From the NCBI RefSeq assembly GCF_011386835.1, contig NC_088798.1, positions 91,016,001 through 91,080,000 of the forward strand: a stretch of 64,000 nucleotides of DNA, given 5' to 3'. A program made the position numbers and the translations under genes. The notes beneath the pieces were generated by a model that was not told where the DNA came from, did not search any database, and worked only from the letters and a program-made list of their open reading frames with translations. This DNA is from Chrysemys picta bellii (Eukaryota). Positions 26,562-55,499 of this stretch are shown here, one piece after another; the first letter of the stretch is position 1, and every line of letters begins with the position of its first letter.

Positions 26562-29429
26562 TGCATTACATTGATGATAATACTTGGCACTTATACACTG
26601 TTGCTCTTTACAGGCATTGACTAATGACCCTCACAACACCCATGATGTATTCCTATTTCATTAATTATTCCTCTTTTATAGAAAGGTAAACAGAAACATT
26701 GAGGATCTAATTCTCCACTAGCATAAATGGGCTCAACTTCCATTGATTACACTGAACTGAATTTGGTTAAGAATACACACATTACTCTTGTCTACACTGA
26801 GCTTTTTTCTTGTCTACCCTGTTGCTCCCCCAATGGTAGTAATGCTGTGTCAGAGCTAGGATTTCTAGGATTAGGACTCAGGAATTCCTTCCTGTGGGGA
26901 CCCTGCCCAATCCATAATGGTTAGATACCACAGTAATATGGCAGGTGCTGTATAAAACTTATGATTGGTAGAGCACAAGCTGCTGCATTTTTGGAAATTA
27001 AATGGCAAAACAGATTTTATTTCAAATTTTCTTTTAAAATATGTATTTTTGTTGGAATTGTTCTATGCCCAGTGTTATCCCAGAGAGAATTGTTATGACT
27101 GAGTGAAAATAAGAGTTTTCAACAGTCAGGTTGCTAATCTTTTAAGTGTAGTTGCATAAAGAACCCCACTGTCCTAATACTACCTATTTCCTCTTTTAAA
27201 TTATTTATATATTTATTATATTTTACATGAGCTGTGGAACCTGGAGGCATTTTTGCAGTGTCAGGTCATTCTGAAGCACATTACATACAAAGAATCTACT
27301 CCATTACATTACAGGGCTAGCAAATGCAGTTGTATGTGATATTGTTCATTAATAGTGCATAATTACTGTATGTGAAATAGTTCTTTGGGCAGTGATGACA
27401 TTTTTTCATAAGGACTTAAAGCTCCAAGGCAATGTTCTCTATTAAGGGGCTGTTTCACATATGAGGGTATATCAATATACAGTACCTTAATGCAATTGCA
27501 GAAAAATAGTGAAGGCTGCTTAGCCAAATGAAGCTATTAACATGTATAATGTATTTTCCACAAGATTTAAATCGTTTACTGAGTTTATAAAAATCACATT
27601 TCATATCTCAGCTCTGTCATTGTAATACCTAGTGAATATCTAGTGAATAGCAGTTGCAGCTACATCAGTTTCAGACAAATACTAATTTCCTATGTAGAGA
27701 TGAATTTTTGTTTTTTCTCTGAAGCCTAAAAAATACTTGTGCACTCTTTGAAAATTGCTATAAAACCAGAATTTTCTCTAGATCTTGGATAATATTAGCT
27801 ATTCCTAGCATGCCTGAAGATTTTAGCTCAGTCATCCTGGAGCGATGGTTGAGGACAAAACATTTTCTTTCAAATCTGTCAGTTGCCTTTAGCACTGTTG
27901 AACATGAGCAGTGCCCTATGTACTGTGTGGCACGTTAAACCTAAGCTATTTAGCGGAGACACCAGAACTATGCCCCCCACAAATCCTCTTACCTTCAATT
28001 ATTCCTTCCACCCTCTGCAATCCAGTCCAATATGTACTGTATTCCTGATACTGTAAGTATAATTTTAATCTTGACACTTCATTCAATTAATTTCATGTCA
28101 CCCCTAATATTTAAATGTTTAATGGGTTGCAGGCTCCTCTATGGTAAGGCATAACTGCCCCACAGAAGTTGCCAGAGGGGAAAGCTGGTGGTTTGGGCAC
28201 ATGGGTGGGGATTTTGACACCCAAGAAGCAAGAACATACGTGAGCTGTTTTTGGTACCTCGGATATAGTTGTGGCATCTGGTTCTGGGAAGGGGTTGCAT
28301 CTCCTCTTTCCACTCCCTCTTTTGGACAGGGCCTTTAAATCTATGGGGAAACTGGAGATTTGAATTCCTTGTCACTCCACCCCAATGTCAGCTAATACAT
28401 CCCACAATGATAAATGAGCATGTCAGCCTGATGTTTTCCTAATATTATTGGCAATAGTACACAATGCTAGCATTTAAAGTTTGTGTCCTTATTAACTGAG
28501 GGTTCACCTTTCTATCCAGATGTTACCATGGTATCTGCACTCAGTGGAGGCACTAGAATTTACAGTCCCCTGATTTAAAAGAGGGGACTGCTGATAGGGC
28601 ATTTTCCATAAGGGGCGGGGTGGGGGAAGGAGTCTTTTGGCTTGAGAGGGCCCTGATTTTTTAACATCCAGGGCATACTGCAAAGCACATCTGTTCTCCT
28701 GGGCTTTTCTGGAAAGAGAGAGGTGAAGGATTTAAGGATTGTGAGTTGTAGGTACTGGGGTTTTTGGGCGGGGGGGAGGGTTGTGGTTTTTAGGAGGACC
28801 TACCACATTATGTTATGGCTTATTATGCCATTAAGTTGGTTGTGTCATATTCGATATTGTTATTTGGGGTATATGGCTTGGTTGGCAGAGTTCTTCTATT
28901 TTGCATTGAGAATATTTACTCTTTGTTGTGTTTTATCATTTGTACAGCACTAAAACTTTGGACAGGTGCTTTATTAAATCCAAATAAACCACAATCAAGG
29001 TTGTTTCTGAGTCATTAAAGTAAGTGAACAGATTTTTCTGCACCACTGCAGCTTTTCTCAATTTTTACTGTGACCCAAGTCACAATCTAACATTTATTGG
29101 GTGATGTGTTGCAGTCAGAATTGTCAGGATAAGGTTTGTACAAAGCAGGCTAGGAAATCTAATCCTCTAAGAGAGCAATACATTCCCCCTCATGAGTTAG
29201 CCTTGCAGTGAGGAGCTGGTCAAGGAGCTTGTGCCCCTGAAAAACTATTGTAGGAGGGTCCAACTCAGTGGTTAGCGCCATTGAAGACCCATCAACTAGA
29301 ACTGTCTAATAATGCCAGTAGAAATGGTCTGTAGAATTCCCCCATATAAGTCAATAGAAACTGAACCCATTAGATAGTGGTAATACAGTAATTTGTTATG
29401 ATACCTTACGGTTAAATAATATTTTAAAA

Positions 29430-29653: not shown

Positions 29654-31621
29654 AGATTTTTTTAAAAGTTATTATGGTACCTAAAGATACAGATAGGTGC
29701 CTAGGTGCTTTTGAAAGTCCCAGTAAGCGCCTTTCTGCAGTTTTAGGTGCCTAAATACCTTTAAAAAAATCTGACTTTGTTTTTAAGGTTCCACCCAAAA
29801 GAGACCCATGTAATAAGTGTCAGGGAACTCTACAGGAGGAGGATGACGGACTGACTTGACCCTGCAAGTGTTTGGGTTTGTGGTTTGAGTGAGTCTAGAT
29901 ATTACAAAGGTCCTGCTTAGACTTCTAAGCAAATATTTAATTAGAGCAATAAGAATATGTATATATTGAAGGTTTTTAGAAATAACTGTCACTGTTTTAA
30001 TATGTCCATCACTGCAGAAACTAGTAATAATATCTTTAGCTCTCAGTGGAGGCTGCTGCTCTTCTGATATTTCCCAGCAGGAACTACAGGCTGGTGATGT
30101 AGCATGTGATTTGGAAAATGCAAGCTCCTATTTTAACATTTGGGAAAGCAGGAGACTTTCAGAGTTGTTTCAAATTCTATAGCTGTTAAATGTGATTGAT
30201 TTCAAAGTATTTATATAGCGTCTAAATTAATCAGTTAAAAAAACTCCACACAACTTATGTGGCAAATCATAATTCCTCCTGTTTGTTCATGCATTCCAAA
30301 TAAAGCTCAGCTGCATTTCCTGAGCTTTTCTTACTTTACATCATCAAACCATCAATGCGGCAGCTTCCTTTCTGGTTGCTGATATTTATAGACACTACTA
30401 ATTTTCTTTAGTGATTTATTCTTCTTTGCAATTACATGTCATGACTGCAATCTCTTCTATATCATTGTGCAGTTTTCCTTCAAGAGATTGTATAAAATGA
30501 CGCAAATCCTGCTGGGAAGCCGATGCCATCAAAATATCACCCGTTGAGAAGCCTCCATCAGGTAGCTAGTGCCAGGAAACCGTGTTTTTCATGCAAGGTG
30601 ATTAGCATCAGAGTTTGGAAGTTCTACTTGTATCACTAGTTGATCAGCACTTTGCTAATGCATTGCACGGGTGTGCCTGAATTTAAATGAAGGCCAGCCA
30701 TGCAGTCCTTTTCCAACTGTTTATTCAACAATACATTGTTGGAGCCAGGTTCATTGCTTCTTGACAGAAGTGCTTGTTAACTCTGAATCTATGATGATGA
30801 TGATAATAATAACCGAGTGACTGGAAAGTATAGAGAAAAATAGTGTTTAAAATTCAGACAGGCTTGCATAGGTTGCAAAACAGTAAACAAAAGGGGAAAT
30901 TGTAACCCAGTAATTAGATGTTTGAAAACAATGATGCTTTTCATTGTATGTAAACAAATATATTTTCAGAAACAGGGTGTATACAATTGCAGAAAAAAGG
31001 GCTTGCTTAATAAAATGCATGAACAATACTGGATTTGTTGAAAATATCATGTCACAATTGGGTGACAGAACAAGTTCAAAACGGCCTTGGAGTAGGTGGT
31101 GGTGGATACCCCACTACTGAGTGAAACTCTTTGAGAAGTGTTTCTATGTGGTGATTTCCATCTTTTCCTCTAGAATATACATAACATCTTAATTTCTTTT
31201 TCCCTTTTTTGTTACTTAACTCTGAAAAATGTTTGTATTTATTTATTTTGATTTATAGACATGATGAAAAAGAACGCCTATCGCTAGATGCCCTTGACGT
31301 AACTCAAAGTATCAGTGTAGTACTTTAAGATCACTCATCACAATCCTCCACCCCATTATTTCCCCATCTCTCCAATTACAATCCTGTCCCCCACCCATTT
31401 TCTAATATCTGGTGGGAGGGAGGGAAAATGAGTCTATGGCAAGCACTGAAGTTCATCAACTTTGGACTATTTCAGACCATGATGGAGCAAATTCCAAAGT
31501 TGTGAACCCGTCACAGAGAATACCCTGCTAGCAGTCCCTATTATTTATAGCTCATCTGATCTCAACTGTAGCAGTGAGGCATGGGGACAGAAGTGATCTT
31601 TCAGGAACAGGTAGGTAGTTT

Positions 31622-32282: not shown

Positions 32283-34239
32283 AGCACAGATTTGTTTATT
32301 TTTCATTTAGAAAATGCAACCAATACAGTCTTTATGCCGCATGTGTAATATTTAACATAAGATGACTTTTAAAAGACAGATATGGGAACAAAAGATTCCC
32401 TTCCCCCCTCCTCAGGATAAACTACACACCAAATTCCACCCAAGGAAGGCAAAAGCAATGAGCCCTGCATCCATACAGTCCATACACTGTTGCAGGGACA
32501 GATTTTCAAACATGTGAGGTATGCAAATATGTGTCTATTGTGTGCATGCAGACCAGGTAACTGCACTCAAATTAAGCACGGAATTTCACTTTGCATACTT
32601 AATGGCCTTGAAAAGCAGGCTCACTGTATGGAGGTTGCTATACAAGGTACAAGAATAATAACTAAACTTTTAATAAACATATAGGTATATCATAAAGTAT
32701 GCTTAATTACTATTATAATATATATATATATATTGCCTTTCATCCCTAAGCTTCCTAAAGTGCTTTAGACACCAAGGACCTGATCCCGTAGTACTTACTC
32801 AGTAAAAACTCTTCACTAAAGTCAGTTAGATCCTAGGTTCTACTATATCTACTTCATACCAGTGCTGGTATTCAGGCTTAATAATGCTGTGGCCTGGGCA
32901 TGGTAGTTCAAGAAGAAATTACAATAATGCTCATGAGGGCAGACTAAATTAAAATGGTTCTTTCCTTCCACCACTCCAACTTAGACAGTTGAATTCCAGC
33001 ACTGGTATACAGTGGTATGAACATGGCTCAGTATTTTTTCTATCCCTGTATAAACACCCCTATTTTTAGCTCTCATGTTATAATGTCCTCATCTCATCAT
33101 CCTGAAAGATCAGATTTATTGGATATTGCAATTTAAACCTCCACTTCCTTCCTCTACAAATGTAGCTAAGAATCACAACCCCTTTAAATTAGCCAATGCA
33201 TGCACGGTGATTTCCATTTGCATTGATACAAGAACATCTGATCTGACTTCTGTATTTTCTTTATGGGTTTATAGGTTGATGGGGCAAGGGAGGGGAGGAG
33301 GGGGAAACACTTGCAGATGAAAGATTCCAGCTGACCTTTGAAGTCATCCCGAATAGGCACCGCTCACGTGCCCAAATGACTTCGTTATATGTTCTCAATG
33401 ACATCTATGGATAGAGTTAGTGCCAGAAGGACAACACCATGGTGAACTGAAGGGGAGAGGACTGAACAATATGTGCTACAATGGGTTGCCATCTTTAATG
33501 AGAGCAAAATATGGCTTCTTGGGTCTCATTTTATACTGAAACTCTTTCCCTATTTTCATTCTAGTTTATTTGTAACTTATTTGCTTTCAGTGGGAGTAGT
33601 TGTGGTGAACATTTATTTTAAACCCTTCATCCTTAAATGTAATGTTTTTGTTGGCTTTTTGATTCTGAGGGGCCTGTGCAATTCCTAGTACCTGCAATCA
33701 AATTTATTGTACCTTCCTTTGTTTATATTCATGTTTATATCTTTCACTTGCAACTTTTGCCTCAGGGAGAAAATTCTAGTGCCAAAACACCACAAATTCT
33801 TGGATAAATTTTCAAAAATACTTAAGTGACTCAGGAACCTAAGTCCCAGGCTCATAAGTGGCTACGTCCCTTTTGAAAATGGGACTTAGACTCTTAAGCC
33901 AATGTAGCCAACTTTGAAAATTTGACACCTTGTCTTCGTATGCTATTTCTGCCATATAGAAACTAAAATGTTGAGATCAGATCTGATGGTATTTTGTCTG
34001 AATATATAACTCCTTGAAGCATTAAAGGCAGTGAGAAAAACACAAATATAACACCAGTGTCTACAGTGGGGTTTGTTTCCTGTGGAAGATGCATGTTCAG
34101 TCCTGTAAATTATTTCCTTTACCTTTTAAAAACACATATATTCTTCTGTAATAATACAACCCCCCACTCCTTCAAGCAGTGATATTGTAATGTTTGTGAT
34201 GATTAGATACTGCAGATATGGGGCAGATAGATTCTAGAA

Positions 34240-34571
34240 CAGAGCTTCTCAAAGCCGGTCCGCTGCTTGTTCAGGGAAAGCCCCTGGTGGGCCGGGCCAG
34301 TTTGTTTACCTGCCGCGTCTGCAGGTTCGGCCGATTGCAGCTCCCACTGGCCGCGGTTCGCCGCTCCAGGCCAATGGGGGCTGTGGGAAGGGCGGCCAGC
34401 ACATCCCTCGGCCCGCGCCGCTTCACGCAGCCCCCATTGGCCTGGAGCAGCGAACCGCAGCCAGTGGGAGCTGCAATCGGCCGAACCTGCGGACGTGGCA
34501 GGTAAACAAACCGGCCCGGCCCACCAGGAGCTTTCCCTGAACAAGCGGCGGCCCAACTTTAAGAAGCACTG
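34240..34571. mobile_element. Palindromic hAT MITE (termini type B)
   Basis: TIR CAGAGCTTCTCAAAG vs CAGTGCTTCTTAAAG (13/15); perfect TSD TTCTAGAA (34232-34239, 34572-34579); arms ~155 bp. Confidence 0.93.
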
Positions 34572-35149
34572 TTCTAGAATATACTTTAGTATTTATTTTT
34601 ATGGGTTCTTTGTTGCCTTGTTCTTTCTCTTGTTTTATTCCATTCTTATTCACTTATCATCATGTCTGTGCCCTGCAATCCACTCTTGCGATGACGTGGT
34701 TTTGATTACAGGGAGGTAGAGTTGCAATGGGCCTGTTCACAGGGTGATGAAGTCCTATAGCAAAGTAGGTTTTGTAACGTACATCAGTCCACGGGGTGAT
34801 AGGGTAGTGCAGGCAGGGAGGGATTGCTATATTGCTCAGCCCCTGTGGTTTCAGGGTTTGCAAAAGGCTTCTGCCCTCGGCAATGTGGGGAGGGAGATGG
34901 GGCTTGTAATGGGCCTGAGCTTTCAGGGTGTGGGTGTTACAATGAGGTGTGGTTTGCAGTGAGCCGAAACCCTCAGGGCATTACTGGGAGGTGGAATTTG
35001 CCGTGGCCAGAGCCCTCCGGGCATATAGTGAGACAGGGTTGGCAGCGGGTGTTACGTGCTCCCCAGGTTTTCCCCATGCAGTTCTATATCTTACTGGTTT
35101 CAGGCCTTTTGCCCCTTCGCCTCCCCCATTTAACAATGGAGTTTTGCCC

Positions 35150-36200
35150 AGGGACGTGCCCCCTGCTCGTTCTCATCCATGCAGGACAACAGAGAACCAG
35201 CAGTTACCGAGCGCTGCCATATTCAAAGATGGCTGCTCAAGGAGTACCTGCTTTCTTCAGTCCAAGATGGCCGTCCTGCTGGCAGCTAGCAGATGCTTGC
35301 CCCAATCCATGATGGCCACCAAGCAGGGAAGAATGCCCACCACAAAGATGGCGGTCGGAGTGGCACCTCTGTGCCCCTACCAAAAATGGCCGCCGCCCCT
35401 CCTTGAATCTCATGACGTCGCCAGGACGAGGCTTGTAAAGCAGGCGGGGGCGGGGCCTCCGCCTGAGGAGACGCGAGGGAGGCGGGGCTGGAGGTGTGTC
35501 CTCCCCAAACCGGAAGTGCCGCGCTGCCTCCCTCCAGCTGGTTGTCATTTCGCTCAGCGGCTCTGTCCTGAGGAGACGGGACTCGGCGGCGGCCGGGAGG
35601 GGAGGGAGGTACCGGCTGCGGCAGCGAGCAGGAGGCGGCCGGGGACAAGAGATTCCGTAATATCCAGACTCGCCGATTACTGAAACGCCTCCCGACTCCT
35701 CGGAGCCGGTCTCGCGCCCCCTCCCCCCGCGATAATCGATTGTTTTACATGAGGGGTAAGGGCAATCGCCTGCAGCTGCGAGGACGCGAAGCAAGGAAAG
35801 GACGCTTCGGAGCCGCCGCCGCAGGACCCCACCCCCCTGGTGACTCCAGCGGTCTCCCTCCCCTGCAGTCCTAATCGATCGTGACCCTGTCCCGTAATCT
35901 GCGGGCGATTTGGGAGAGCCGGTTAAACACCTTCCATGGGGGAGAGAGGAGCCTGGCCCCTCGCCGCCTGCACCATCCCCTCCCCGCTGGAGGCGGCTGC
36001 TCTCCTGAGGTAAAATCCCTCCTGCCTTCCCAGACGCCAGGACTTCTGAAGGGGGGGTGAGGGGGTACCCCATAGAGAACGGGGGCCTGGCGAGTCAGCC
36101 TCCCTGCACCAGCCTCTCGTCCCCTGCCGCATGCCGAGTCCCTGAGGTAAAATCCACCCTCCCTTGCAGACAAGGGCTCCCGCAGCTGAAGGAAGCCTAC
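35150..36200 (+). promoter_or_regulatory. CpG-island promoter of CPEB4
   Basis: GC/CpG-rich; YY1-like ATGGC cluster 35211-35394; CRE-like TGACGTCG 35413-35420; GC box GGGGCGGGGC 35447-35456; ETS CCGGAAGTG 35510-35518; Inr-like TCATTTC 35545-35551; no TATA box. Confidence 0.85.
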
Positions 36201-37226
36201 CTAGCTCAGTAAAAGGAGGCGAGCCCAGTACCAGAAACCACCCTTCCAGAAGCAGCAGCAAGACACCTCCCTCACCCTCCTCCTGCACAAGTCATTGCCT
36301 GCTCTCACCCCCTCCCCCGAATGCTGAATGCAGATTTCTAAGATGAAACTCTTCTTCGGACAGCCAGGACTCATCTAAAGGACACAAATATCTGATCATA
36401 AATAGGAGGCGAGCCTGGCGAGCTCAGAAACCCAGACCAACAGGAGCAGCATCAAGAATCTACCCTTCTCCTGCACAGCTCACTCCCCTCTCATTTCCAG
36501 AATACTGACTTTCTGAGATAAAAATCTTACCCCTTCAGTAAGCCAAGACTCCTCTAAAGGACACATACAAAATAGTATATATTATTATTATACACAATAA
36601 AGGCTTACCGAGCAGCAGCAGGGGGGAAAAAAGCCTCCTGCACAATTCACTCCCCCACTGAATGCTAAAATCCTGAGGTAAAATCTTCCCATATTCACAG
36701 CAAGGACTCTTTTGAACAGGAAACAAATATATATTAGATTATATAGAATTTATTAAATTATTCCAGACTTAATTTTTTTTTTCAGCCAAGAGGTGGAGGG
36801 ACCAGACGTCATTGTTTCTCTTTTCCTCTTAACTCATTTATGGCCGAGTCAAGGCTGTTGAGGAGGAAAAAACAGGATAGTTAAAATCTCTTTGTATCTC
36901 TCCCCAGAAGATTTTTCTCTTATTGCTGTGCATTTCCTTTAGGAAAAGGAAACCTCTTATTTTGCTAACCAAAGATTTATTTTTCTTTTCCTTCTAATCA
37001 GAGAAAGGAAACAAACATAAATTGACACACATTAAATATTTAAAGAGATTTATCTTTGAAAGAATCAGAATTTATATCCAAATCAGAAATATCTAAGGAG
37101 TGTGTGGAGGAAGAAACTGGAATATCTAGATTAAAACAAGATATTTGCTAGTTCCTCTTTGGTGGAGGAGGAGAGAAACACTAAACGTTGTTTTTTACAG
37201 GAGAAAATCAATCCTAACTATAATAA
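35547..37226 (+). other. CPEB4: Predicted long CPEB4 5' leader (~1.7 kb) with 8 upstream ATGs forming 7 uORFs
   Basis: uORFs 35749-35874, 35936-36013, 36131-36145, 36321-36341, 36328-36378 (second ATG 36343), 36662-36676, 36840-36884. The TSS is inferred from the Inr-like motif only. Confidence 0.7.
35945..36730 (+). repeat. Five degenerate tandem units (136-196 nt spacing) in the CPEB4 leader
   Basis: CCTGCAC anchors at 35967, 36103, 36282, 36470, 36637; CTGAGGTAAAATC-like anchors at 36005, 36142, 36338, 36513, 36673; shared downstream GACT/GGCT...(T)AAAGG/TGAAGG text. Confidence 0.85.
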
Positions 37227-38351
37227 ATGGGGGATTACGGGTTTGGAGTGTTAGTGCAAAACAACACTGGGAATAAGTCAGCTTTTCCAGTGAGATTTCA
37301 TCCACATCTGCAGCCTCCACACCATCATCAAAATGCAGCCCCCAGCCCTGCTGCTTTTATAAATAACAACACAGCTGCCAATGGCAGTAGTGCTGGGTCA
37401 GCTTGGCTCTTTCCTGCTCCAGCTGCCCATAACATTCAGGATGAGATTCTGGGGTCAGAAAAATCTAAAACTCAGCAACAGGAAAAGCAAGAGTCTCTAG
37501 AAAAACAGCAGCTTTCCCCTAGTCAAAGTCAGGAAGCAGGCATGCTGCCTGAACCTGAGAAAGCTAAATCTGAGGAAAATCAGGGAGACAATTCTTCAGA
37601 GAATGGCAACGGGAAAGAGAAAATAAGAATAGAATCACCAGTGTTAACAGGATTTGATTATCAAGAGGCTTCAGGGCTAGGTACTTCAACTCAGCCCTTA
37701 ACATCCACTGCATCTTCTCTGACTGGTTTTAGTAACTGGTCAGCAGCTATAGCTCCTTCTTCTTCTACAATAATCAATGAAGATGCCAGTTTTTTTCACC
37801 AGGGAGGGGTCCCTGCTGCCTCAGCTAATAATGGTGCTCTGCTGTTTCAGAATTTTCCACATCATGTCAGCCCTGGCTTTGGAGGTAGCTTTTCCCCTCA
37901 GATTGGACCCCTCTCTCAACACCACCCTCATCACCCCCATTTTCAGCATCATCACAATCAGCATCAGCAACAGAGAAGATCACCTGCAAGCCCTCATCCA
38001 CCTCCATTTACACATAGAAATGCTGCTTTTAATCAACTGCCTCATTTGGCTAATAATCTTAACAAACCACCTTCTCCATGGAGCAGCTACCAAAGCCCAT
38101 CACCTACACCATCTTCTTCATGGAGCCCCGGTGGCGGTGGATATGGTGGGTGGGGAGGGTCCCAAGGGCGAGACCACCGCAGGGGACTGAATGGAGGGAT
38201 AACACCCCTGAACTCCATCTCACCCCTGAAGAAGAATTTTGCAAGTAATCATATCCAGTTGCAGAAGTATGCTAGGCCCAGCTCGGCCTTTGCTCCGAAA
38301 TCTTGGATGGAAGATAGTTTGAACAGAGCCGACAACATATTTCCTTTTCAG
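37227..38351 (+). CDS. CPEB4: CPEB4 coding exon 1 (codons 1-375; N-terminal low-complexity region)
   Basis: MGDYGFGVLVQNNTGNKSAFPVRFHPHLQPPHHHQ...KSWMEDSLNRADNIFPFQ closely matches the recalled vertebrate CPEB4 N-terminus; donor CAG|GTGAGA at 38351/38352, phase 0 (1125 nt). Confidence 0.98.
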
Positions 38352-41194
38352 GTGAGATTCTACTCTGCTAATATACATGGAAAAAATGATTTGATTTAAT
38401 TTTTATAGAAACGATAAGGGTTTTTTTTGTTTTTTACAATATAATTCAATTATCAGACTTGCATGGTTGAAAATGAATTTAATTGAAATAAAGTGAACAT
38501 GTTTAACTTGTAATTCACCCTGTGACTTTTCAGTCTTCATGATCTCTGAGCTGTGAATCATGTATTTTTTTTCAATAGTGCTTGTCAGATAAATATCTAT
38601 TTATAGCCCAGCGGGACATCTATTAAAGTTCAGTTCCATCGTGGTAATTAACATTACACGCAGTAAGCAATAACAGTTGGTGAACAAATGTTTCTGCTTT
38701 TTTAAAAATAACATAAAAAGGAGTGAAAAAATGAAATATTTTTTTTACTTTAACACTTATATCATTTCCAAATAGTTAAAATCTTGCACTATACCTTGAG
38801 AACAAGCATTCAGTAATCCTTAAATCTGTCGTCTGCCTTGCGTTGCAAAATAGTTCATGGATTTGCATTGTGACATGACTTAAATATTTTTTTTAGATTT
38901 TTTTTCCCCCCTGTACAATCGAAATTACTAATCTGATTTATTTTATTTTTTTGTAGTGAACTGCATAACGTTTTTTTCACCAGCAATGGTAACAAATATT
39001 GGTTAAACAATATTAAATCTTTACTAAAAATAGATCTGGACTGGTCAGTTGTTGGCCTGCACTGTGCTACACCTTATACTGTCAGGAGGCAGGTTGTCTG
39101 ACTTTTCAGATTCATGAGAAACATATCTAGTTTGTGGAGGTTAAAATTAGCTATCTGATATTGATCCAGATATACAATCAACATTTGGATGGTAATAGTT
39201 GTCTCTGTATCTGACCACTAGTTAAGACCTAGCTTGGTAGCTTTCATATGTTTAAAAAAGACCTCATAAGGTGGATCCATAACACAAGGTTCCTTAATGT
39301 CTAGTGGCTTGTTTTTCAGGATCTTCAGACAAGGGCAAAAGTAAAGATTGCAAAATGATTGCAGTATTTCTAGCCATGGTGTAAGAAGCAGGATGACCTA
39401 CTTTTACGTAATTTGGGGATGAAAGATCAGTAGATTAGAAGAACCTCAGAACATTTGTCATGGTAACTACAAACCCACAAAGAAAATATATTTAGATCTA
39501 TAATGACCTTGTAGAATCAGAGGGAGGATCAATTCATTTCCCCTTGGTAAATTATTCAGTTTGTTTGGTTTACAGGGCCTATGCAGCCTTCTGAAAACAG
39601 CAGCAGCTGCTGGCAATACCTTTCATTAAGGATTTCTTTTTACTGCAGAATCACTAGCAGTTTAAACATCAGGTAGAGTCCGTACCCTTGGACTGCATGG
39701 CAATAATAGATCTTAATTTTAAGAGTTGGAAATAATATAAAGAACTGGTGTCCAATATACCAAATTCATACACTCAGACCATTAGCAAAGAGACACAGCT
39801 GGAGTTGGTCTTTTTTCAGCCTCACTGCAGCAAGACTTGGCTTGCTGTTTAATTCATTCTGTACCCTGACACGTAGCTGATGTACAGAGTGACAGAATGA
39901 GATCAAGTGTGTACTTGGTGCCGCATTTAAGGCCCAAATGTATATGTACTGATAGAAATGTGCTCCTTTTGGTATTGAGGAAATTAACAAAGCTAAATGA
40001 TTCCTGAGTGTGGCTTTTGTATTATGTTCTAAATCTCAAAATATGTCTGATATTTTATCATGGCTAAATATAATTTCTACACAACATACTGGTGTCTGTT
40101 TATGTAAACAGTAAGATGAAGGTATATATGTCAAGACCATGTCTGACACTTCTTCATGCCAGGAAAAGGAAAGTGTTGGAGTGAAATGCTTTCCAGTCTC
40201 TTACTATCAGTTATGTTCTGTGATGAACAAGAAAAGGGCAGGGCAGCAAAACAGGACTCCAGCACTGCAGATCCAGAAAAGATGTTGATGATTTTCCTGA
40301 CCATTTTGGGTAATTGCTTTTTATAACATTTGTGGTGTGAAATCCTTAATACCTTTGTGATCATTTTAAAAGGTGACTTCAGTTCTGAGAACACTGGGGA
40401 AAAAATTATGTAAAATTTGGCCATAGGTTTTTGTTATGCTGGATGTAGGGTTCAGATTGTATTCTTGTGTCAAATCAGTCATGAGGATTTTTGCTTATGA
40501 TGGAATACGTGAATGTAGTTGCACATATATGTAGTGTCCTTGAGGAGGCAATCATGTTTTGTCTGAGACTTTCGTTACCAGAATCTTCTTAGATTGGTAC
40601 CAAAATCTACCTTTGCTGCTGAAACAGAATGGAGGTATTTGATTAACTGTGACTGTTCCTGGTTCTCCCTTTCATTTAACATTTATTTTCTTATTTAAAT
40701 CTGTTCATGAGTGTTGCTCTCATATTATGAGAATTAGCTTATTTAGAATGCAAGAGTATGGAAGAAGAAACACGAATCTTTGAGAATGTGATTTTTAGAA
40801 AAGGTATCTTTACTCAAAAGCTTAGTGAAATACAAAAGTACATATTGGAGCATATCTTGTGACAGAGATCCTATAGCAGCCGTACCTAAATGCTCATTTT
40901 TTATTGACGAGTGTTGCATATGTCTGTGTAAATAACTTACGTGAACAAATGTTGATTTTAATTGTTTTTCCCTCATGACTCTTAATGACTTGCCATGAGA
41001 CAAAAATCCCTAATTTTTGTAGATAAAAATAGGGATGATTTCTTGTGTTGATTCGCTTGGTATTTTTGTAACAGCAAAGGTAGCTCATTCGGTATTGTGG
41101 TGGCCATGTACAAATTGGTTTGGTGTTTGTGATGCCTAGTAGTTCTATAGTACTACTCGTTTGAGGGTCTCAAAGTCTCAGAGCACAACTTGGG

Positions 41195-41340: not shown

Positions 41341-44309
41341 CTCAATTAAAGCAGTTAAATCTGTTGTTTAAAAAAATTAACTAATTCCTTATTTTTTTTT
41401 TTTTAGCTTTTCAGAATTACAGACTTACAAGAGATCTGTTTCAAAAGAGCAAAGCCACAATTTGTCGTCATCCTTTGACCTCTCATTTGGAAAGTTGCTA
41501 GTTTTCAAAAGAATAAACTGTGCTCTTGAAAAGGGAAATGGCAGGTTCTTAGTTATAGTAACCTTCCATAGACATCTGATCAAATGAGTGAGTGGACCTA
41601 CCTTGTAATATGAGGGATTTTCAAAAAACAATTGCTCTCAATTTTCCTCCCTGCGACACTGAAAGTTTAGCAGCTCAATGGGATGGTGAATTGTCAGTAA
41701 TTGAACTGCGCACTGCAGCATTGTCCTCAGGATTGTACAGACTTTCCTCTTGCTACATACTTGCACGTTTAAAAAGACGAGCACTCTGCTTGTTAGGCAA
41801 TCTATAAATCTTGCTTTGATAGGCATTTCCAGGTTTCAAGCGCTCATCTTCAAACATGTGAGGATGTTTGTAGAATCAGTCCTTGAAGGCACTAACAAGT
41901 TGAGCAATAGTGCTCAGCTTTCTGTAAAAAGTACTCAGACAAATTTCTGCATAGCTTCTTTGACTAGGACATGAAAATAAAAATTCAAATTGCCCATTTC
42001 ATATAACTTTACACTTGTGGGCAGTTCACTGAATTCACTTGCTCAAAATGTTTTTTTTCTCCCCAGAGAAAGGCCTCCAGACATTTAACCCCATCCCAAT
42101 CCATGGAGGTTCTGTGCCAAGGGGGCTTTCTCTTCCCCAAGGTAGATGTGGAATGTTTGTGAAAACACACATGATTACTGTAGTGTAAAATTAAAACTCC
42201 CTTCTGTAATCTGTTTGTACACAAAAATCCTGACTATATTGATAAGTGTATTAAAACAGTCCCATTCATAAAGCATTTTAGAACTAAAAATATTCTGTTA
42301 CATGCATTTGTCAACCTTTCATCATAAAGGAATCTTGCTAATCTAATGGTCTTTAGTTTGCTCACTTCAGGATTTTGATTTATATATTTTTTTTATTGTT
42401 CTGAAGGAGCCTCTTGAGAGACTGAGAGCTGGTTGCATAAAATGATGAGGCAACCTGTTTTGTTGAAAAGGTTTACTTTTATTCTATCAGTAGGTTTTAT
42501 TCCATAAAGTTAATATTTTAGATTAAAATACATGTATTTGGGTTTTTTAAATACCTGCTTACCCATTTTCTATAACTATATCCACTGCATAGTAACTAGT
42601 GTTTTGTATGCCATCCCCCAACTGATTTAGCTATTGGTCTGTGGAATTAAAAGCAGTATAATGTGGTATGACATACACAATTTAAGTACTGTGGAAGTTA
42701 ACACTGTTCTTGTTTTATAAACTTACTACTGACGTTTATACTTAGGCTTCAGCCCTCCTGCATATTTCTGACCTCAGGGATTTTTTAAAAAGAGGGCCTT
42801 TGTTAGGAAGCTATTTGAATTATGTTTCCTAAGATTAAAAGAAGGAATCTTATTAAGCATTTTTCTTTGAAAATGAATTGCGTACACAGCAGGGTAGCAC
42901 GGAGCAGAGAACATTGGGTAGTGTACAGTAGTAGACGCATAAAGAGGTTTATGTGCAGCAGAAGTGGGCTCAGGCATGTTATTTGAAATTTATAGACAGG
43001 ACAGTGACTCTTCTTGATATTTAAAAACTCTTTCAGTTTGACAGAGCTTAAGAGCTTTTGTGGGAGTGAGCACTTTTGATTCACTTGAGTTTTCCAGCTT
43101 TCATCTTACTCTTCCTGGTGAAGCTATAAAAAATGATCAGATCAGCATACAGAAACATCCGTTCAGGAAAAACCTGTTTATTCAGTGCCTTGTTAATTCA
43201 GCGGTTACTGGATTGGGAGTTGGAAGACACCACTTACTGGGAGGGCTGGGTGGGGTGTATATAGCAGCTGAGTTAAGCTTCATCATTCTACTTCAGTATG
43301 AAATAAAAATGTGGAATTAATGTCCACTGCCTAAGGCTACCAAGACACTTGACTAAGTGTTAGGGACTCCTGGATATAGAGTTACTAGAAACTATAAAGG
43401 CAAACATAAAGAAATAAACAGGCTTTGGTTTATAATAGTAAATATTTACTTTACAGCTATGACACCAGTTATTTAAATTATGGTAACTAGGACAAGTTTT
43501 CAGAAAGCTTCAAACCTCCAAAGCACATACAGTGAATAGGAATTAGAGCCAATCTTTCTACAATTATAGTATGCAGCAATTCTGCAAAGGAAGGTTCTCC
43601 AAAGAACTAAACCATATATATTGAATAGAATTGATAGTAAAGTATGATATATGCAACTATGCTTGCCCCATAAATACTGCTTAATCATCATCTTCAATAA
43701 ATTGCTTAAATCAACAGTTTACTTTGCATCATTATAGATGCCTGACTCTTCAAAAAATTCACATTTTGTAATATTGGGCACAGCCTTTGCTACAAGCAAA
43801 TTGTCACACCCAGGCAGGCTTTGATTTTATACTGTTTGGCTTTCATAGCATTGGCAGACTATGGCTGTGATTGCCTCATCTTGGGACGCATTGAATAGAA
43901 ACTCTCAGTTTCTGGAGTCTTAATTGGTCAGGCGATACTGATGGCATGGGTACAGATTAAATGTAGTTAGGCCTGTACTTCAGTGGTTGAATCCAGATCA
44001 ACTGTCTGTGAAGCTCAGGAGAGTTTAGATCTAAGGTTTTGGTTCAGCTCCATGCTGAACATTCTCTTCCATGGCATCAAGTTTTCATGTTCAATTTCCA
44101 GTGCATATAGTTTCACAATATGAACTATACATAATTTATTCTAAATGTTTTTATTTTGTATGGGTCCCTTTGGACTTCAAGAAGGGAAGAAGATGGATCT
44201 TATGGAATCAGAATTGTATGACTTAATGGTTTCCTACTTATAAGCATCTCCATTTTAAACTTTGTCCTTACATAGTACCTGTCAACCATAGATTTCAAAT
44301 TACTTAAAA

Positions 44310-48700: not shown

Positions 48701-50420
48701 AGTTTAGCTTCGCATCTAGATGTAAAGAGAAACCTACATTGGTGGGTAATAATTGATATAGTTGTATACAAGTTTACTCTAATCTCCTATCTAGAGTTGC
48801 TTATAACTTTTCTTGTTTCTTTATGGGCAGAAACTTTCCGCACTTGGTCTTGGTTTTGGGTTAAAGGTGAATCTCTCTTGGAAAGTGAACAAAATATAAC
48901 ACTTGGGATTAGAGGTGGTCTCCTTTTTGAACACAGAAATTAAATGCAATGTCTGTTAATGCAGTTTAGCAAAATTCTACTTGCCTGTTTCCTTGGGAGG
49001 GGGTGATTGTGGGGAAACTTTTTTTGGTGATGACTCAATTATTTAATCATGGGGCAATATATGTTGTGCCTGGACTAGTGAACACTTGTAATTTTGCAAG
49101 ACTCTATTATTGAAACATGAAAGTTAAATATAGACACTAAAATCAAGAAATTGAGAACCATAATGCTTGGCCAAAGTGTTTGGTGTTGGTTTGTTACTAC
49201 GTAAATGACATACATTACTTTTAACTTGGATAACCAGAGAGGTGGCTTTGATGTGTGAACTTTGATCTTCTCGTCAGTTGAGCATTGGCTGTTTTAGTCA
49301 AGAAAGGGTGACCTATGAAATATGCTAAAGGATGATGCTAAGGAGAAATCCTTGGTAAATTTACTTCAAATGGATCAAGATGATGTGATGGTAATGTATA
49401 CAAGTCAACTTGTCTCTAAAGTTTGTCTAGTGCTTTGTTTTTAAGTGTTCGTTTAAAATTGCAAAGTTCTGGGTGTAGAGAGTGAAATTTTAAAGTACAA
49501 AATGTTAACTTTTTACCAAAAAACGAGGCTGTTTGGCACCAATATTTGCAGTAAATGGAATTCTGTGAACTTCAATTTTAATTGTGCAGACTCTGAAATG
49601 ACAAATAACTGTATAGCACTGGATTAACATCCATTGTATTGTAATAGCATAGTTTAAACTGGTAAGTGCTTTCCTTAACAAGGATGCTTTCTTGAACTGG
49701 GGTCTTAAATTGCAATTCGTTTCATTGCTTCAAACAGGATTTATTTGAGGGTGGAGAGTATTAAACTTGGCAAATTTTTTGGAGTAGTTCAGCCTCCAGA
49801 CTTCAGCTGGCCTGAAAACGTCAATGGAAACTAAATTGATGAAGAAGGAAAACAAACTTTTGTGTTATTTGTTTTTCCATTTTCCAGCCAACTCTAAAAT
49901 ATACCTGAACACTCCTATCTTACATTACTTTTCTTTCGTAAAACAAACATAAAGCAACCCAAATTTTCTTGGCCTCTTAACAGTATCAGTTCTGACTGTA
50001 TTTCTATGGCTGGCAAAATAAATGCTCAGTGTCCGTACGATAAACGTATTGTTTTTTTGTTTTTTAAAAAAGAGATTGCTTTGCAGTGAGCTTTAATACA
50101 GGCTGTCTTATTTTAATTAAATGTTTTAAAAACTACTTTTTGCAATGAGGCTTTTTTAGGAGTAAAACTGTACTTTGATTTGTTATCAGATATTTTGTTC
50201 ATGGTGTTGCTAATGCAAAACTGAAACTTCAGATATGTATTTACTGTTACTCAATAAAAGCCCAAGAGTCTTGTAGTTTTACTTTAAATATAATTTCATT
50301 GTATATGTTTAATTCTGATCTAATGACGTAGGGTGGAGTTGAAACTTCTGCATATTTGAGGTAGCCTTGGATAGCATTTTGCTGTCTAAATTGACTGACT
50401 TTGTTTGTGTTTACTTGCAG

Positions 50421-50502
50421 GATCGCGCAAGAACTTTTGACATGCATTCACTGGAGAACTCGCTGATTGACATAATGAGAGCTGAAAATGATTCACTGAA
50501 AG
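50421..50502 (+). CDS. CPEB4: CPEB4 coding exon 2 (82 nt; DRARTFDMHSLENSLIDIMRAENDSLK-G)
   Basis: Acceptor TTGCAG| at 50420, donor AAG|GTAAAT at 50502/50503 (phase 1); matches the recalled CPEB2-4 motif TFDMHSLE.SLIDIMRAE.D..KG. Confidence 0.97.
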
Positions 50503-51699
50503 GTAAATTTAGAAGGTGACTGTTTCCTGCAGTAAATAATTAGGATGATGTGCTTGGGCAGGATACAAAACTTGTCTTTTGTTAGAACAACTAAGTATGA
50601 TTTGCATATTGCATGTTGGTCAACTCATCTAGGCCTCATTTTCCTTCTCTGTCAAGAGACGAAGGTGTCAATGCAAGTGAGCACCTTTGTGTGTCTAATG
50701 TCTTGATCAAGGACACTACAAAATGGAAGCACAAGGCATTCTTTTGTGTAATTGGCTTGAATTGTGTTGATTTTTTTTTTTTTAAATGCGCAGCATGTAA
50801 AAATTAAATTCCCAGTTTCTGGAATCTTATTCAGATAGGTAAAACATACCAACCTACTTGACAGTGTTTTCCCTCTTCAGCCACATATGCTCTTCTGTCT
50901 CTGCAAAAAATACGTCTTCGGTACTTATTTAACTAACCCAGTGTCTAATATGAGTACTAAGCTATTTCATCACAACTCTTTGTCTCAAGTAGTCTTTCCA
51001 TTGACTATGCAACACACTTGCGTAATTATGTCCATTTCCCTTTTGAATTATAAGGTTCTCCTGATGCAATACTTTCTCCAGAGTAAAGATTGAACATTCT
51101 TGTGCTGTCTCTCAGGAATGAGAGATGCTTACATATATAGGAACAGTATACTTTGCAAGTGAAAGATTTAAAAAGAAATGAGTTTTAAGCTTCCCATGAA
51201 AGTGTTCTGAAAATATCGACTAAAGAAACAACTGTCTTCTGAAAATGCTTTTAATACACATTAATATATTGCTTAATAGAAGCAGCACATGCTGTAAAAC
51301 CCTGAAGTTTAGTTCATTGCAGGTCAGTGCTAAACACTAATCTTACAATTTCAGTCTCAGGGTTACAGTTGTCTGAGTACTCTTATTTATCCACCGCAAG
51401 GTTTTTGCACATTTTTTTTGTTATTGACCTGAGGCCACTAACACAGATTTATGGTAGTCTTTAAAAATAAATTTCCCTGAACACCAAGGTTTGTGTTATT
51501 AATTGAAGTGACTTGCATTTTAGTAGTGCTTCTCATCTAATACATCTGTTAAGTACTTTGGGATTGTATACTAAAAGTCCTTGCATCCAGCTCTGGGGTG
51601 AAATGCAGCTACATGACAATTCAGTGCAGGAAATAACTTTCCAACTGAAACTACAAGGGAGTGCTAAGTAGGCAAAACTCCCACTGAGTTTAAAAATAA

Positions 51700-53085: not shown

Positions 53086-55499
53086 TAAAATTTAACAATG
53101 ATTTACGTGTCGGTATTCTAAATCAGGTTACTTCTTCCCTTCATAGCACAATGCACTCCAGAAATAAGGAAAAATATTAAAATACACCAAGTGAGCCTTT
53201 TAAAGTCTTCAGACCTGGGGGGAAATATGTTTAGGGATTGGGAATCATAGTGTTGGGACCATTGTCTCAAGGTTTTGACAGAAACGCCTGTATGGTTAAG
53301 TGATAGCCTGACTTCATATTGGGATGTACAGGATAGTGGTAGTTTTTTGGTTTGGAAGTCTACAGCATAACAATCACAAAAACTAAACAAAAAATCTATA
53401 TTCTGTTATGACTACTTAGTGATTGAGTCTTACATTTACTAATCTTGGGTTTCTTTATGAATAAGTGTAACAATTGTTCTTTGCTTGCAATATTAAGCAT
53501 ACAAACAAGGCAATGCTTTGTATTTTTGGTGGATCCTTGAGAAGCATTTTGAAAATAGCATTGATTCACTATTAGATTCAGTGTTAAAATCCTGATGAGA
53601 TTTTTGTAAAATGTGATAACAAATATTTTTATTTGTGGCTGTTTCATTTTTTTTCTTCCTTGAATCCTATCCCCATTTCCTTTCCTGAACAGCTGCCATT
53701 TCAGTATGTTATTTTTATCCACGAGGGTGAGCGTGCTGACTTCTACATAGCCAATGACAATCTGCAGAAGCCTTTCCCTAGAGACTAATTGCATCTTCTT
53801 TATATTGTACTCGGCCTTCAGCTGAGCCGGAGATCCAGAGACTGATTTTTGAATCTGGGTCTTCCAGATTGCAGTTTGAGCATTGGTGTAACACTAGACG
53901 GCTGACTAAATATTTCCCTCTTTCATCTAGAATGAAATGTCTTTAAATGCTGTGTAGTGGCAGACTTGCTGCTTTAGTGACTATCCTGAACCTCTGTTCT
54001 TTCCAGGCTATGGGACTGGCGCTTATTGCCTGGAAGTGGTGCAAAGTGAAAGGGATTAGAGAAGCAGGCTGGCACGCATGCTTCCAGCACTGCAAAGCAC
54101 TGTTGTAAAAGAGTCTGTCTAGAAACAGCCAAAGGAAAAGATGTGAATCCGCTCTAAAGCTGCATGAGAGAGATACATTGGAAAAATTAGGCTAAAGATG
54201 GCTAGGGTGAGAAAAAGCTAGGCTTTGGATAGAGTAGACTAAAACTGAAAAGGATTGGGTGCATGGGGGCGGGCGGGGAGGTAGATGTGAAGATGGTGTG
54301 CACATTGCCTGAAAATCGGATGGGGGGGGGGAAGGCAACCTGATGAAAATGGAATTCATAGACCTGATGTTTCTCAAAATGGATTATTTTGGGTTAACTG
54401 CTACATGTAGTAATATTTCTAGAACAATCATCAGCCTCTTCAAGTCCTGAAAAACTACTAGATTTTTAAAAATGGGTGACGATCCATAATGATCCTATGG
54501 AAAAGATATTTGTGTCAAAGGGTTGGGATGACTTGTACAGAGATTTTTCTGAATGGGAAGGAAGAAATTAACTGGCATTTTCTTGTGCAGTGTTTGGAAT
54601 GTGGTTTGTTTTTGTGACATCCTATCTGGCTCCTCAAATATATGCTCAGATAATATATTTGACACAGAGTCATGTGTTAATGATCGCACAATGGTCCCCA
54701 ATCCTGGTTGAGGCCTATAGATCCCACGGTAATATAAATAACTAATAATAATATATAAGGCTATCGTTCTGGCCAGATAAGTGAGTGACCATGCATAATC
54801 AGTTAAAAAAAAAAAAAAAAACACCCTAAGGTTTGATTTTTTTTTTGTCAGTATTCTAAAGGGATCTACAAAAACAGAAGTATACATATTTTTATGCTGA
54901 GCAGGGGTGTTAAACTTAATAGCCAAAAACAACTCATCTTTTCCTCCCTTGTTTTGCTTTGGGAGTGCTACACAGTACCCTTCTGGGATCCTGAGGGTAT
55001 TCAGACCCATGCGTTAAGACCTGCACTTAATATAGCTTTATAATCAGTGAAGCCTTTTGTATTATATATTAGTTTGGGTGAAAGAGGAGCTGCAGAATGC
55101 CTGTCAATTTTTTTATAAAAAAGCTGAACTGATGATCCAATCTGTGCACCCTCTTCTCTGAGCAATTTATAGAAAAAAAGATCATTACTCATTTGAAACT
55201 GAAATACATAAAACTTAATATAAAATGCTGAAAAACTAACTGCCTCTTCCCCTCGTGTGGTATACTGGCCCAGTTTGTCCTAACCATGATTAGGAAGTAC
55301 TTGTGAGTTATGCATTAAATGACTGCAGCCTGTAGGTCACTGGTGGTCATCCTGCAAGTTCACTTTGTCATAATAAAAATGAAGAACCCATGGGATTTCT
55401 GAGTTAATAGATAATATAATTTTGATTATAAGCAGATGAATTATTCACTTTTAAAATGGAAGTGAATGTAATACCTATAAGTTAGGGTCTAATAGACAA

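What the first reader, a model, noticed from the sequence alone, without database searches (positions are those of the whole stretch)
35945..36730. uORF array apparently built by tandem duplication of a micro-uORF cassette
Seen: five degenerate units, each CCTGCAC, pyrimidine tract, start position, CTGAGGTAAAATC-like motif, C-rich, GACT/GGCT, TAAAGG/TGAAGG. The motif supplies the stop: unit 2 ATG CCG AGT CCC TGA (36131-36145); unit 5 ATG CTA AAA TCC TGA (36662-36676); unit 3 ATG CTG AAT GCA GAT TTC TAA (36321-36341, 6 nt longer, frame kept); unit 4 ATA CTG ACT TTC TGA (36502-36516, start lost, frame kept). In unit 1 the 35936 uORF ends at the motif's TAA (36011-36013). CTGAGGTAAAATC is exact in 3 of 5 units while the spacers have diverged. 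Inference: selection on a repeated translational-control or RNA-binding module. I do not recall this repeat being described.
Basis: partly seen in the sequence, partly recalled or inferred. Interest (0 to 1): 0.8.

Follow-up and report, generated by a model that had tools for sequence, protein, structure and literature searches.

The report
Ancient five-unit repeat in CPEB4 leader
The stretch before the CPEB4 start codon of this turtle holds five degenerate head-to-tail copies of a roughly 140-190 base segment, also present copy for copy in birds and a gecko but not detectable in a rhinoceros or a frog. The copies add tiny upstream reading frames and a conserved stop-containing motif to a leader already known in mammals to be controlled by such frames.

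Summary
Five collinear units lie at 35955-36790. Each is found by a profile built from the other four (E 1.6e-5 to 1.3e-14), and nothing else in the 64 kb matches.

The window is the 5' end of CPEB4 of a turtle. The array sits between a deeply conserved promoter block and the main ATG at 37227. The same five units occur, position for position, in two birds and a gecko, so the duplications predate the sauropsid radiation. A rhinoceros and a frog show no detectable units. In the rhinoceros only the two flanks of the array align.

The ancestral unit very probably carried a four-codon reading frame, but its ATGs turn over between lineages. Only the motif copies in units 1 and 5 are invariant, and a reading frame ends in each of them in every species with data. 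Units 2-4 drift.

There is no known RNA family, no excess folding and no covariation. A splice-acceptor-like site 25 nt before the ATG is read through in two bird mRNA contigs.

Best reading: a sauropsid-specific tandem expansion that enlarged a uORF-regulated leader. Function is not shown.

The parts
35500..35625 (+). Conserved promoter-proximal block with a CCGGAAGTG site at the 3' edge of a G+C-rich island. It is the inferred transcription start region.
   Evidence: Aligns at 75-84% with bird, gecko, rhinoceros and frog loci. G+C is 0.566 in 34001-36000. That transcription starts here is an inference.
35749..35874 (+). Older upstream reading frame A (MRGK..., 41 codons), upstream of the array.
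   Evidence: The ATG and first codons are shared with Mimus, Gekko and rhinoceros.
35936..36013 (+). Older upstream reading frame B (MGER..., 25 codons). It runs into unit 1 and stops in its motif.
   Evidence: The start context 35928-35957 is at least 85% invariant across three species and aligns with rhinoceros. It ends at the motif's TAA in turtle and gecko and at the motif's TGA in Mimus.
35955..36090 (+). Repeat unit 1; motif copy at 36005-36017.
   Evidence: The motif is 11 of 13 invariant in turtle, Mimus and Gekko.
36091..36270 (+). Repeat unit 2, with micro reading frame 36131-36145 (MPSP) and motif 36142-36154.
   Evidence: The frame is kept in Mimus as MPSA but is absent in Gekko. 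The motif has decayed in both.
36271..36458 (+). Repeat unit 3. Turtle-only frame 36321-36341; degenerate motif 36338-36350; frame 36343-36378 (MKLFFGQPGLI) starts inside the motif position.
   Evidence: The 36343 frame is kept in both birds with an in-frame 3-nt insertion, but its start is GTG in Gekko.
36459..36625 (+). Repeat unit 4, with ATA-initiated remnant 36502-36516 and degenerate motif 36513-36525.
   Evidence: The start is ATA in turtle and birds and ATG in Gekko (MPMSRD). The U3/U4 junction 36443-36487 is at least 85% invariant across three species.
36626..36790 (+). Repeat unit 5, with micro reading frame 36662-36676 (MLKS), motif 36673-36685 and an AT-rich tail.
   Evidence: Birds have MLRS. 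Gekko lacks the ATG, but a 27-codon frame ends at the same TGA. The tail 36718-36776 is conserved in all species, including rhinoceros.
36840..36884 (+). Older upstream reading frame downstream of the array (MAESRLLRRKKQDS).
   Evidence: Birds have MGESRLLRRKKTG and Gekko MDRLRLLIRQKQNS. A similar start is recognisable in the frog at L005:1084.
37227..38352 (+). CPEB4 main start codon and the coding part of exon 1.
   Evidence: Best protein matches are all CPEB4. Identity to Chelonoidis abingdonii CPEB4 over exon 1 is 99.7%.

Best explanation
A segment of about 140-190 nt in the CPEB4 5' leader was duplicated head to tail into five units in the stem lineage of sauropsids. This happened after the split from mammals and before lepidosaurs separated from turtles and archosaurs.

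The ancestral unit carried three things: a C-rich head (CCTGCAC), a four-codon reading frame (ATG, nine bases, TGA), and a 3' context GGTAAAATC that adds a TAA in a second frame.

The array was inserted between older, amniote-wide upstream reading frames in a leader of about 1.6 kb. In mouse that leader is known to repress CPEB4 translation until eIF2-alpha is phosphorylated. The extra very short frames and spacers lengthen a GCN4-like series of terminate-and-reinitiate steps.

Since then most of the array has drifted and its ATGs have turned over. What stayed fixed is the stop-containing motif in units 1 and 5, where a reading frame terminates in every species examined, together with a few other islands.

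Shown here: the repeat, its age, the orthology of the units, the ATG turnover, and the motif conservation at U1 and U5.
Inferred: that the array is in the mature mRNA, that the frames are translated, and that termination at the motif affects reinitiation.
For: Repeat and age:
- The repeat is real.
- Units are orthologous one to one in Mimus, Eurypyga and Gekko, at the same distances from the main ATG.
- The unit tree groups units by position rather than by species: 5 label changes, minimum 4, shuffled mean 11.5, 0 of 200 shuffles as low.
- No unit is detected in rhinoceros or frog leaders even at E <= 10. In rhinoceros only the two flanks align, about 215 nt apart instead of about 790.

Leader status:
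- A promoter block conserved from frog to mammal lies 1.6 kb upstream of the ATG.
- ATG is depleted on the + strand of the leader: 8 against 17.2 expected, P = 0.002, and likewise in Mimus. CAT is depleted less.
- Two spliced bird mRNA contigs are collinear with the genome for the last 189 nt before the ATG.

Reading frames:
- The U2 frame is kept between turtle and Mimus, and the U5 frame between turtle and both birds. A 12-13 codon frame in U3 is kept with an in-frame indel.
- A reading frame ends in the U1 motif and another in the U5 motif in turtle, Mimus and Gekko, and in the U5 motif also in Eurypyga, even where its start differs.

Literature: mouse Cpeb4 mRNA has eight upstream reading frames that are bypassed on eIF2-alpha phosphorylation (PMC8667601 and PMC10152139, both citing Maillo et al. 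2017).
Against: - There is no transcript evidence for the array itself. The mRNA contigs stop 189 nt before the ATG at an A-rich run.
- ATG retention in U2-U5 is about 7 of 15 unit-by-species cells, no better than expected from ordinary divergence (my tally).
- Within the array ATG is neither enriched nor significantly depleted: 5 against 8.5 expected, P = 0.09.
- Units 2-4 are little more conserved than non-repeated leader.
- Because the motif stops two of three frames, a reading frame ending there is likely by chance alone.
- Mammals and amphibians are each represented by one usable species.
Confidence: 0.5

Rival explanations
1. The array is a largely neutral relic. It arose by replication slippage or unequal exchange in a stem sauropsid and has no function of its own. 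It remains recognisable because turtles and this locus evolve slowly and because it lies inside a generally constrained leader. The conserved islands serve functions unrelated to the repetition.
For: - Three-species invariance in U2-U4 is 24-41%, against 19% for non-repeated leader.
- ATGs come and go.
- Turtle terminal branches are mostly the shortest in the unit tree.
- The locus is unusually conserved overall: four-fold sites are 0.86 identical between turtle and gecko, and long intron blocks align with birds at 68-75%.
Against: - The whole leader aligns end to end with birds, whereas I estimate from the blocks that only about a fifth of intron 1 does.
- All five units have been kept, none deleted, in four lineages.
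- The U1 and U5 motif copies together are 21 of 26 positions invariant across three species, against about one third for the array.
Confidence: 0.28
2. The motif is a 5' splice site or a non-splicing U1 snRNP binding site (GAG|GTAAAA). The U1 and U5 copies act as alternative donors of a leader intron, or recruit U1 to protect the long AT-rich leader from premature cleavage.
For: - In U1 and U5 the invariant part is exactly AG|GTAA or AG|GTAG with variable +5 and +6, giving six contiguous pairs with the U1 snRNA 5' end (established consensus).
- In Gekko the U5 motif is kept although the micro frame's ATG is gone.
- Acceptor-like pyrimidine tracts followed by AG lie about 25 nt before the main ATG in all species.
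Against: - Two independent spliced bird mRNA contigs read straight through that acceptor-like site.
- The only other good acceptor-like site, at 36786, is not conserved in Mimus or Gekko.
- U3 and U4 lack GT in turtle and birds.
- Position +5 is A rather than the preferred G.
Confidence: 0.12
3. The units work at the DNA level as reiterated factor-binding sites in a promoter-proximal regulatory region just downstream of the start site.
For: - The array begins at the 3' edge of the G+C-rich island.
- The best conserved repeated pieces, the CCTGCAC head and the U3/U4 junction 36443-36487, contain no start or stop codon.
Against: - ATG depletion in the leader is stronger on the + strand.
- The in-register ATG and TGA, and the in-frame indel in the U3 frame, are strand- and frame-specific features.
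- No binding-site identity was established.
Confidence: 0.07
4. Each unit is a structured RNA module, such as an internal ribosome entry element, a protein-binding hairpin or a microRNA-like hairpin.
For: Pyrimidine- and C-rich tracts recur once per unit. TGAGGTA equals the let-7 seed (sequence).
Against: - The units fold no better than shuffles: z = -0.28 to +1.18.
- The consensus fold of U5 across four species is -3.7 kcal/mol with a covariation term of -0.06.
- No Rfam family comes near its threshold.
Confidence: 0.03

Closest known systems
Mammalian CPEB4 leader with inhibitory upstream reading frames (Maillo et al. 2017, as cited in PMC8667601 and PMC10152139)
   Same: It is the same gene and the same long leader. 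Reading frames A and B and the frame at 36840 have counterparts in the rhinoceros leader. Several short frames precede a main ATG in strong context.
   Different: The five-unit repeat and its micro frames are not detectable in the one mammal examined. Response to eIF2-alpha phosphorylation has not been tested in any sauropsid.
Yeast GCN4 leader (four 2-3 codon upstream reading frames, delayed reinitiation; established knowledge)
   Same: There is a series of very short frames, none overlapping the main frame, separated by spacers of 60-340 nt. The sequence just 3' of the stop is A/U-rich, the feature that favours resumed scanning after GCN4 uORF1.
   Different: No homology exists. Here the frames were multiplied by tandem duplication. 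Their translation and any reinitiation behaviour are untested.
Minisatellite-type tandem repeats in transcribed leaders
   Same: The copies are head to tail, with a period of 136-188 nt, and no dispersed copies were found.
   Different: The copy number is fixed at five, with orthologous units across roughly 280 million years and no concerted evolution. Length-polymorphic minisatellites do not behave this way.
Conserved-peptide upstream reading frames
   Same: The U3 frame encodes MK-x-F-x-x-GQPGL-x in turtle and two birds, with an in-frame insertion.
   Different: Its start codon is GTG in Gekko. There are too few species for a substitution-pattern test. The four-codon frames change their residues freely (MLKS to MLRS, MPSP to MPSA).

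Membership tests
Tandem duplication array | Adjacent collinear copies with similarity beyond chance | tested here: met
   Shuffle z = 3.1-21. Leave-one-out profile E 1.6e-5 to 1.3e-14.
Tandem duplication array | Local rather than a dispersed mobile element | tested here: inconclusive
   No further copy in the 64 kb window or outside the leaders in about 170 kb of fetched loci. No genome-wide search is possible with these tools.
uORF-mediated translational control (GCN4/ATF4/CPEB4 type) | The upstream ATGs lie in the mature mRNA leader | tested here: inconclusive
   Bird mRNA contigs cover only the last 189 nt. Indirect support comes from the conserved promoter block 1.6 kb upstream and from + strand ATG depletion, P = 0.002.
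uORF-mediated translational control (GCN4/ATF4/CPEB4 type) | Upstream ATGs and stops conserved between species | tested here: inconclusive
   Frames A and B and the frame at 36840 are conserved widely. The U2 frame is shared by turtle and Mimus, and the U5 frame by turtle and birds; neither is in gecko. The 36321 frame is turtle only and the U4 frame gecko only.
uORF-mediated translational control (GCN4/ATF4/CPEB4 type) | Short frames that do not overlap the main frame, with room to reinitiate | tested here: met
   Frames of 4-41 codons. The last stop is 343 nt before the main ATG.
uORF-mediated translational control (GCN4/ATF4/CPEB4 type) | Ribosome occupancy of the frames, and main-frame induction when eIF2-alpha is phosphorylated | not testable with these tools
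   Reported for mouse Cpeb4 only (PMC8667601, PMC10152139).
Conserved-peptide uORF | Peptide sequence conserved more than the nucleotides require | tested here: inconclusive
   The U3 frame is kept in three species with an in-frame indel, but the start is lost in gecko.
5' splice donor | GT with a flanking consensus, conserved | tested here: inconclusive
   Met in U1 and U5 in all species. Lost in U2 of Mimus and Gekko. Absent in U3 and U4 of turtle and birds.
5' splice donor | A conserved downstream acceptor that is used in mRNA | tested here: not met
   The acceptor-like site about 25 nt before the ATG is read through in L011 and L012. The site at 36786 is not conserved.
Known structured RNA family | Match to a curated covariance model, or conserved structure | tested here: not met
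   Best Rfam hit is 23 bits against a threshold of 60. No excess folding. No covariation.

The most novel reading that the evidence does not exclude
The invariant CCUGAGGUAAA element is a functional cis-signal in its own right. One possibility is a termination context that dictates whether ribosomes resume scanning; another is a U1 snRNP landing site in an unspliced leader. On this reading, tandem duplication multiplied it, together with a micro reading frame, to retune stress-dependent CPEB4 translation specifically in sauropsids. That would make it a dated, unit-by-unit traceable example of translational control being built by segmental duplication.
Probability: 0.2. Interest if true: 0.6.

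Novelty: new variant of a known kind. Interest (0 to 1): 0.4.

Why it matters
CPEB4 is a stress-induced translational regulator whose own synthesis is gated by upstream reading frames in mammals. This array shows how such a leader can grow. A single duplication process added up to four further micro frames and stop motifs about 280-320 million years ago, and their fate (retention, loss, re-creation of ATGs) can be followed unit by unit across reptiles and birds.

If the array proves functional, it gives a natural series for asking how the number, spacing and termination context of short frames set basal repression and stress inducibility. If not, it is a well-dated example of how slowly a neutral repeat decays inside a constrained leader.

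Tried and rejected
- Tandem Repeats Finder at minimum score 30 found nothing, so profile and shuffle tests were used instead.
- Lookups of isoform proteins (Apteryx, Calypte, Monodelphis) failed because only the longest product of each gene is indexed.
- The Eleutherodactylus locus has its leader mostly as N. It was left as is and not used.
- Four-fold degenerate sites of exon 1 were meant as a neutral yardstick, but they are themselves very conserved and were dropped.
- The rodent-like cDNA contig L013 has a foreign 5' end, probably chimeric, and says nothing about the leader.
- A lone TGAGGTAA in the frog leader (L005:875-882) was considered as a single-copy precursor of the motif. It was rejected because it aligns at least as well with the start of reading frame A and no unit similarity is significant.
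- ORFs on either strand overlapping the array have no Pfam match.
- Literature searches for a described repeat in the CPEB4 leader, or for uORF arrays made by tandem repeats, found nothing relevant. Maillo et al. 2017 is not held.

Full report
**What is there.** The window is the 5' end of CPEB4.
- The open frame from 37227 matches CPEB4 of many vertebrates.
- Over exon 1 it is 99.7% identical to the CPEB4 of the tortoise Chelonoidis abingdonii, closer than to any bird, squamate or mammal. The animal is therefore a turtle.
- Exon 2 lies near 50416-50508.
- A G+C-rich island covers 34001-36000. At its 3' edge a block at 35500-35625, containing CCGGAAGTG, aligns with bird, gecko, rhinoceros and frog. 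I take this as the promoter and start region, which is an inference.
- The finding lies between that block and the main ATG, inside a leader of about 1.6 kb.

- MAFFT aligns five collinear units: U1 35955-36090, U2 36091-36270, U3 36271-36458, U4 36459-36625 and U5 36626-36790. CCTGCAC and most of the motif are invariant.
- Against dinucleotide shuffles the pairwise scores reach z = 3.1-21. Only U2/U4 is unconvincing taken alone.
- A profile built from any four units finds the fifth at E 1.6e-5 to 1.3e-14 in the whole window on both strands. Nothing else scores below E = 1.
- The exact 13-mer occurs three times here and nowhere else in 64 kb.
- The 14-column run identical in U1, U2 and U5 was never reached in 20000 column permutations.
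- Tandem Repeats Finder misses the array because the copies are only about 56% alike.

**Age and distribution.** I fetched CPEB4 loci of other vertebrates through exact-protein lookups.
- The songbird Mimus (L001), the sunbittern Eurypyga (L002) and a Gekko (L010) each carry the units at the same distances from the main ATG. The contig of L002 starts inside the array.
- The turtle leader aligns end to end with the bird leaders.
- In a maximum-likelihood tree of 18 units, units group by position and not by species: 5 label changes, minimum 4, shuffled mean 11.5, 0 of 200 shuffles as low. The duplications are therefore older than the split of these lineages, and there has been no concerted evolution.
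- A rhinoceros leader (L004) and a frog leader (L005, identified as anuran by its protein) give no hit to a 13-unit profile even at E <= 10.
- In the rhinoceros only the two flanks align significantly: the start of the MGER frame and the AT-rich tail of U5. They lie about 215 nt apart instead of about 790.
- The simplest history is an expansion in stem sauropsids. The caveat is that mammals and amphibians are each represented by one usable species.

**What is and is not conserved.**
- The unit alignment puts the ATG or its remnant, nine bases, the TGA and GGTAAAATC in register. The ancestral unit therefore very probably carried a four-codon frame.
- Across species the starts turn over:
  - U2 ATG: turtle and Mimus, not gecko (the Eurypyga contig does not reach U2).
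  - ATG at 36321: turtle only. Birds have ACG. It sits in a turtle-specific 7-nt duplication.
  - U4: ATA in turtle and birds, ATG in gecko.
  - U5 ATG: turtle and birds, not gecko.
It is kept in both birds with an in-frame 3-nt insertion (MK-x-F-x-x-GQPGL-x), but its start is GTG in gecko.
- The motif is nearly invariant only in U1 and U5 (11 and 10 of 13 positions across three species). It decays independently in U2-U4.
- Three-species invariance is 24-41% in U2-U4, against 19% in the non-repeated leader at 35626-35930.
- The strongest islands are the MGER start context, the U3/U4 junction, the U5 tail and blocks at 36864-36986.
- The motif holds stops in two frames (TGA and TAA). In turtle, Mimus and gecko the MGER frame ends in the U1 motif, in different frames.
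- In all four species a frame ends at the U5 TGA. In gecko that frame has 27 codons and starts further upstream.
- With two of three frames closed, this is suggestive rather than significant.

**Is it in the mRNA?** I could obtain no transcript covering the array.
- Two independent bird contigs that are spliced in the coding region (L011, L012) are collinear with the genome for 187-189 nt before the ATG, then break at an A-rich run.
- They read straight through the pyrimidine-tract-plus-AG site about 25 nt before the ATG. That site is therefore not used as an acceptor in those mRNAs.
- Indirect support for a scanned leader comes from ATG depletion on the + strand. Turtle has 8 against 17.2 expected (P = 0.002), and Mimus 9 against 17.1 (P = 0.006). 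The reverse-complement CAT is depleted less, and flanking controls are not depleted.
- Inside the array alone the depletion is not significant: 5 against 8.5.

**Mechanism.** In mouse, Cpeb4 mRNA has eight upstream reading frames that hold translation down until eIF2-alpha is phosphorylated (PMC8667601 and PMC10152139, both citing Maillo et al. 2017).
- The turtle leader has eight upstream ATGs. Three frames are shared with the rhinoceros or frog and lie outside the array.
- I therefore read the array as a sauropsid-specific enlargement of an already uORF-gated leader. It adds very short frames separated by 60-340 nt, none overlapping the main frame, and followed by an A/U-rich context. This layout works like the yeast GCN4 leader (established knowledge).
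- That the frames are translated, and that the U1 and U5 motif governs termination or reinitiation, is inference.

**Rivals.**
- A mostly neutral relic fits the drift of U2-U4 and the slow turtle branches. It fits less well with the retention of all five units and the invariant U1 and U5 motifs.
- A splice donor or U1 snRNP site fits the invariant AG|GTAA in U1 and U5 but lacks a conserved, used acceptor.
- A DNA-level role fits the codon-free conserved pieces but not the strand- and frame-specific features.
- Stable RNA structure is rejected. The units fold no better than shuffles, the four-species consensus fold of U5 is -3.7 kcal/mol without covariation, and no Rfam family comes close.
- ORFs on either strand have no Pfam match.

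**Novelty and verdict.** uORF control of CPEB4 is known. I did not find the five-unit repeat, its sauropsid distribution or its unit-by-unit history described, though the literature search was limited. It is a new variant of a known kind. Interest is moderate, because function is untested and most of the array is weakly constrained.

Noticed in passing
window 35749-35874, 35936-36013, 36840-36884: Three upstream reading frames outside the repeat logic (MRGK..., MGER..., MAESRLLRRKK...) have start codons conserved in birds and gecko. The first two are also conserved in rhinoceros, and the third is recognisable in a frog (L005:1084). They are probably the ancestral tetrapod or amniote uORFs of CPEB4.
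   Followed up: partly
window 35500-35625: A promoter-proximal block with CCGGAAGTG and CCAGCTGGTTGTCATTTC is conserved from frog to mammal at 75-84% identity.
   Followed up: partly
window 37227-38352: Four-fold degenerate sites of CPEB4 exon 1 are unusually conserved: turtle-gecko 0.86, turtle-Mimus 0.75, turtle-rhinoceros 0.61. This suggests constraint on the mRNA or DNA beyond the protein.
   Followed up: no
window 27159-27853, 30383-31050, 39582-40331, 41694-43241, 53677-54110: Long non-coding blocks upstream and in intron 1 align with birds at 68-75%. One of them, 30838-30940, also aligns with rhinoceros at 79%. They are candidate enhancers.
   Followed up: no
window 36718-36776 and 36919-36986: An AT-rich island at the end of U5 and a block before the main ATG are at least 85% invariant in turtle, Mimus and Gekko, and also align with rhinoceros. 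Their function is unknown.
   Followed up: partly
window 36006-36012, 36143-36149, 36674-36680: TGAGGTA in the motif is identical to the let-7 seed, so an antisense transcript would carry three TACCTCA seed matches. No hairpin or Rfam microRNA match was found on the + strand.
   Followed up: partly
window 36319-36332: A turtle-specific 7-nt internal duplication (GAATGCT then GAATGCA) in U3 creates two ATGs, at 36321 and 36328. Birds have ACG at both positions.
   Followed up: yes
window about 50416-50508: This is CPEB4 exon 2 (DRARTFDMHSLENSLIDIMRAENDSLKG). It is 88-90% identical at the DNA level to bird and frog.
   Followed up: yes
L013:1-400: A rodent-like CPEB4 cDNA contig from a public run has an unrelated 5' end joined inside the first codons, and a frameshift. 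It is probably a chimeric assembly.
   Followed up: partly
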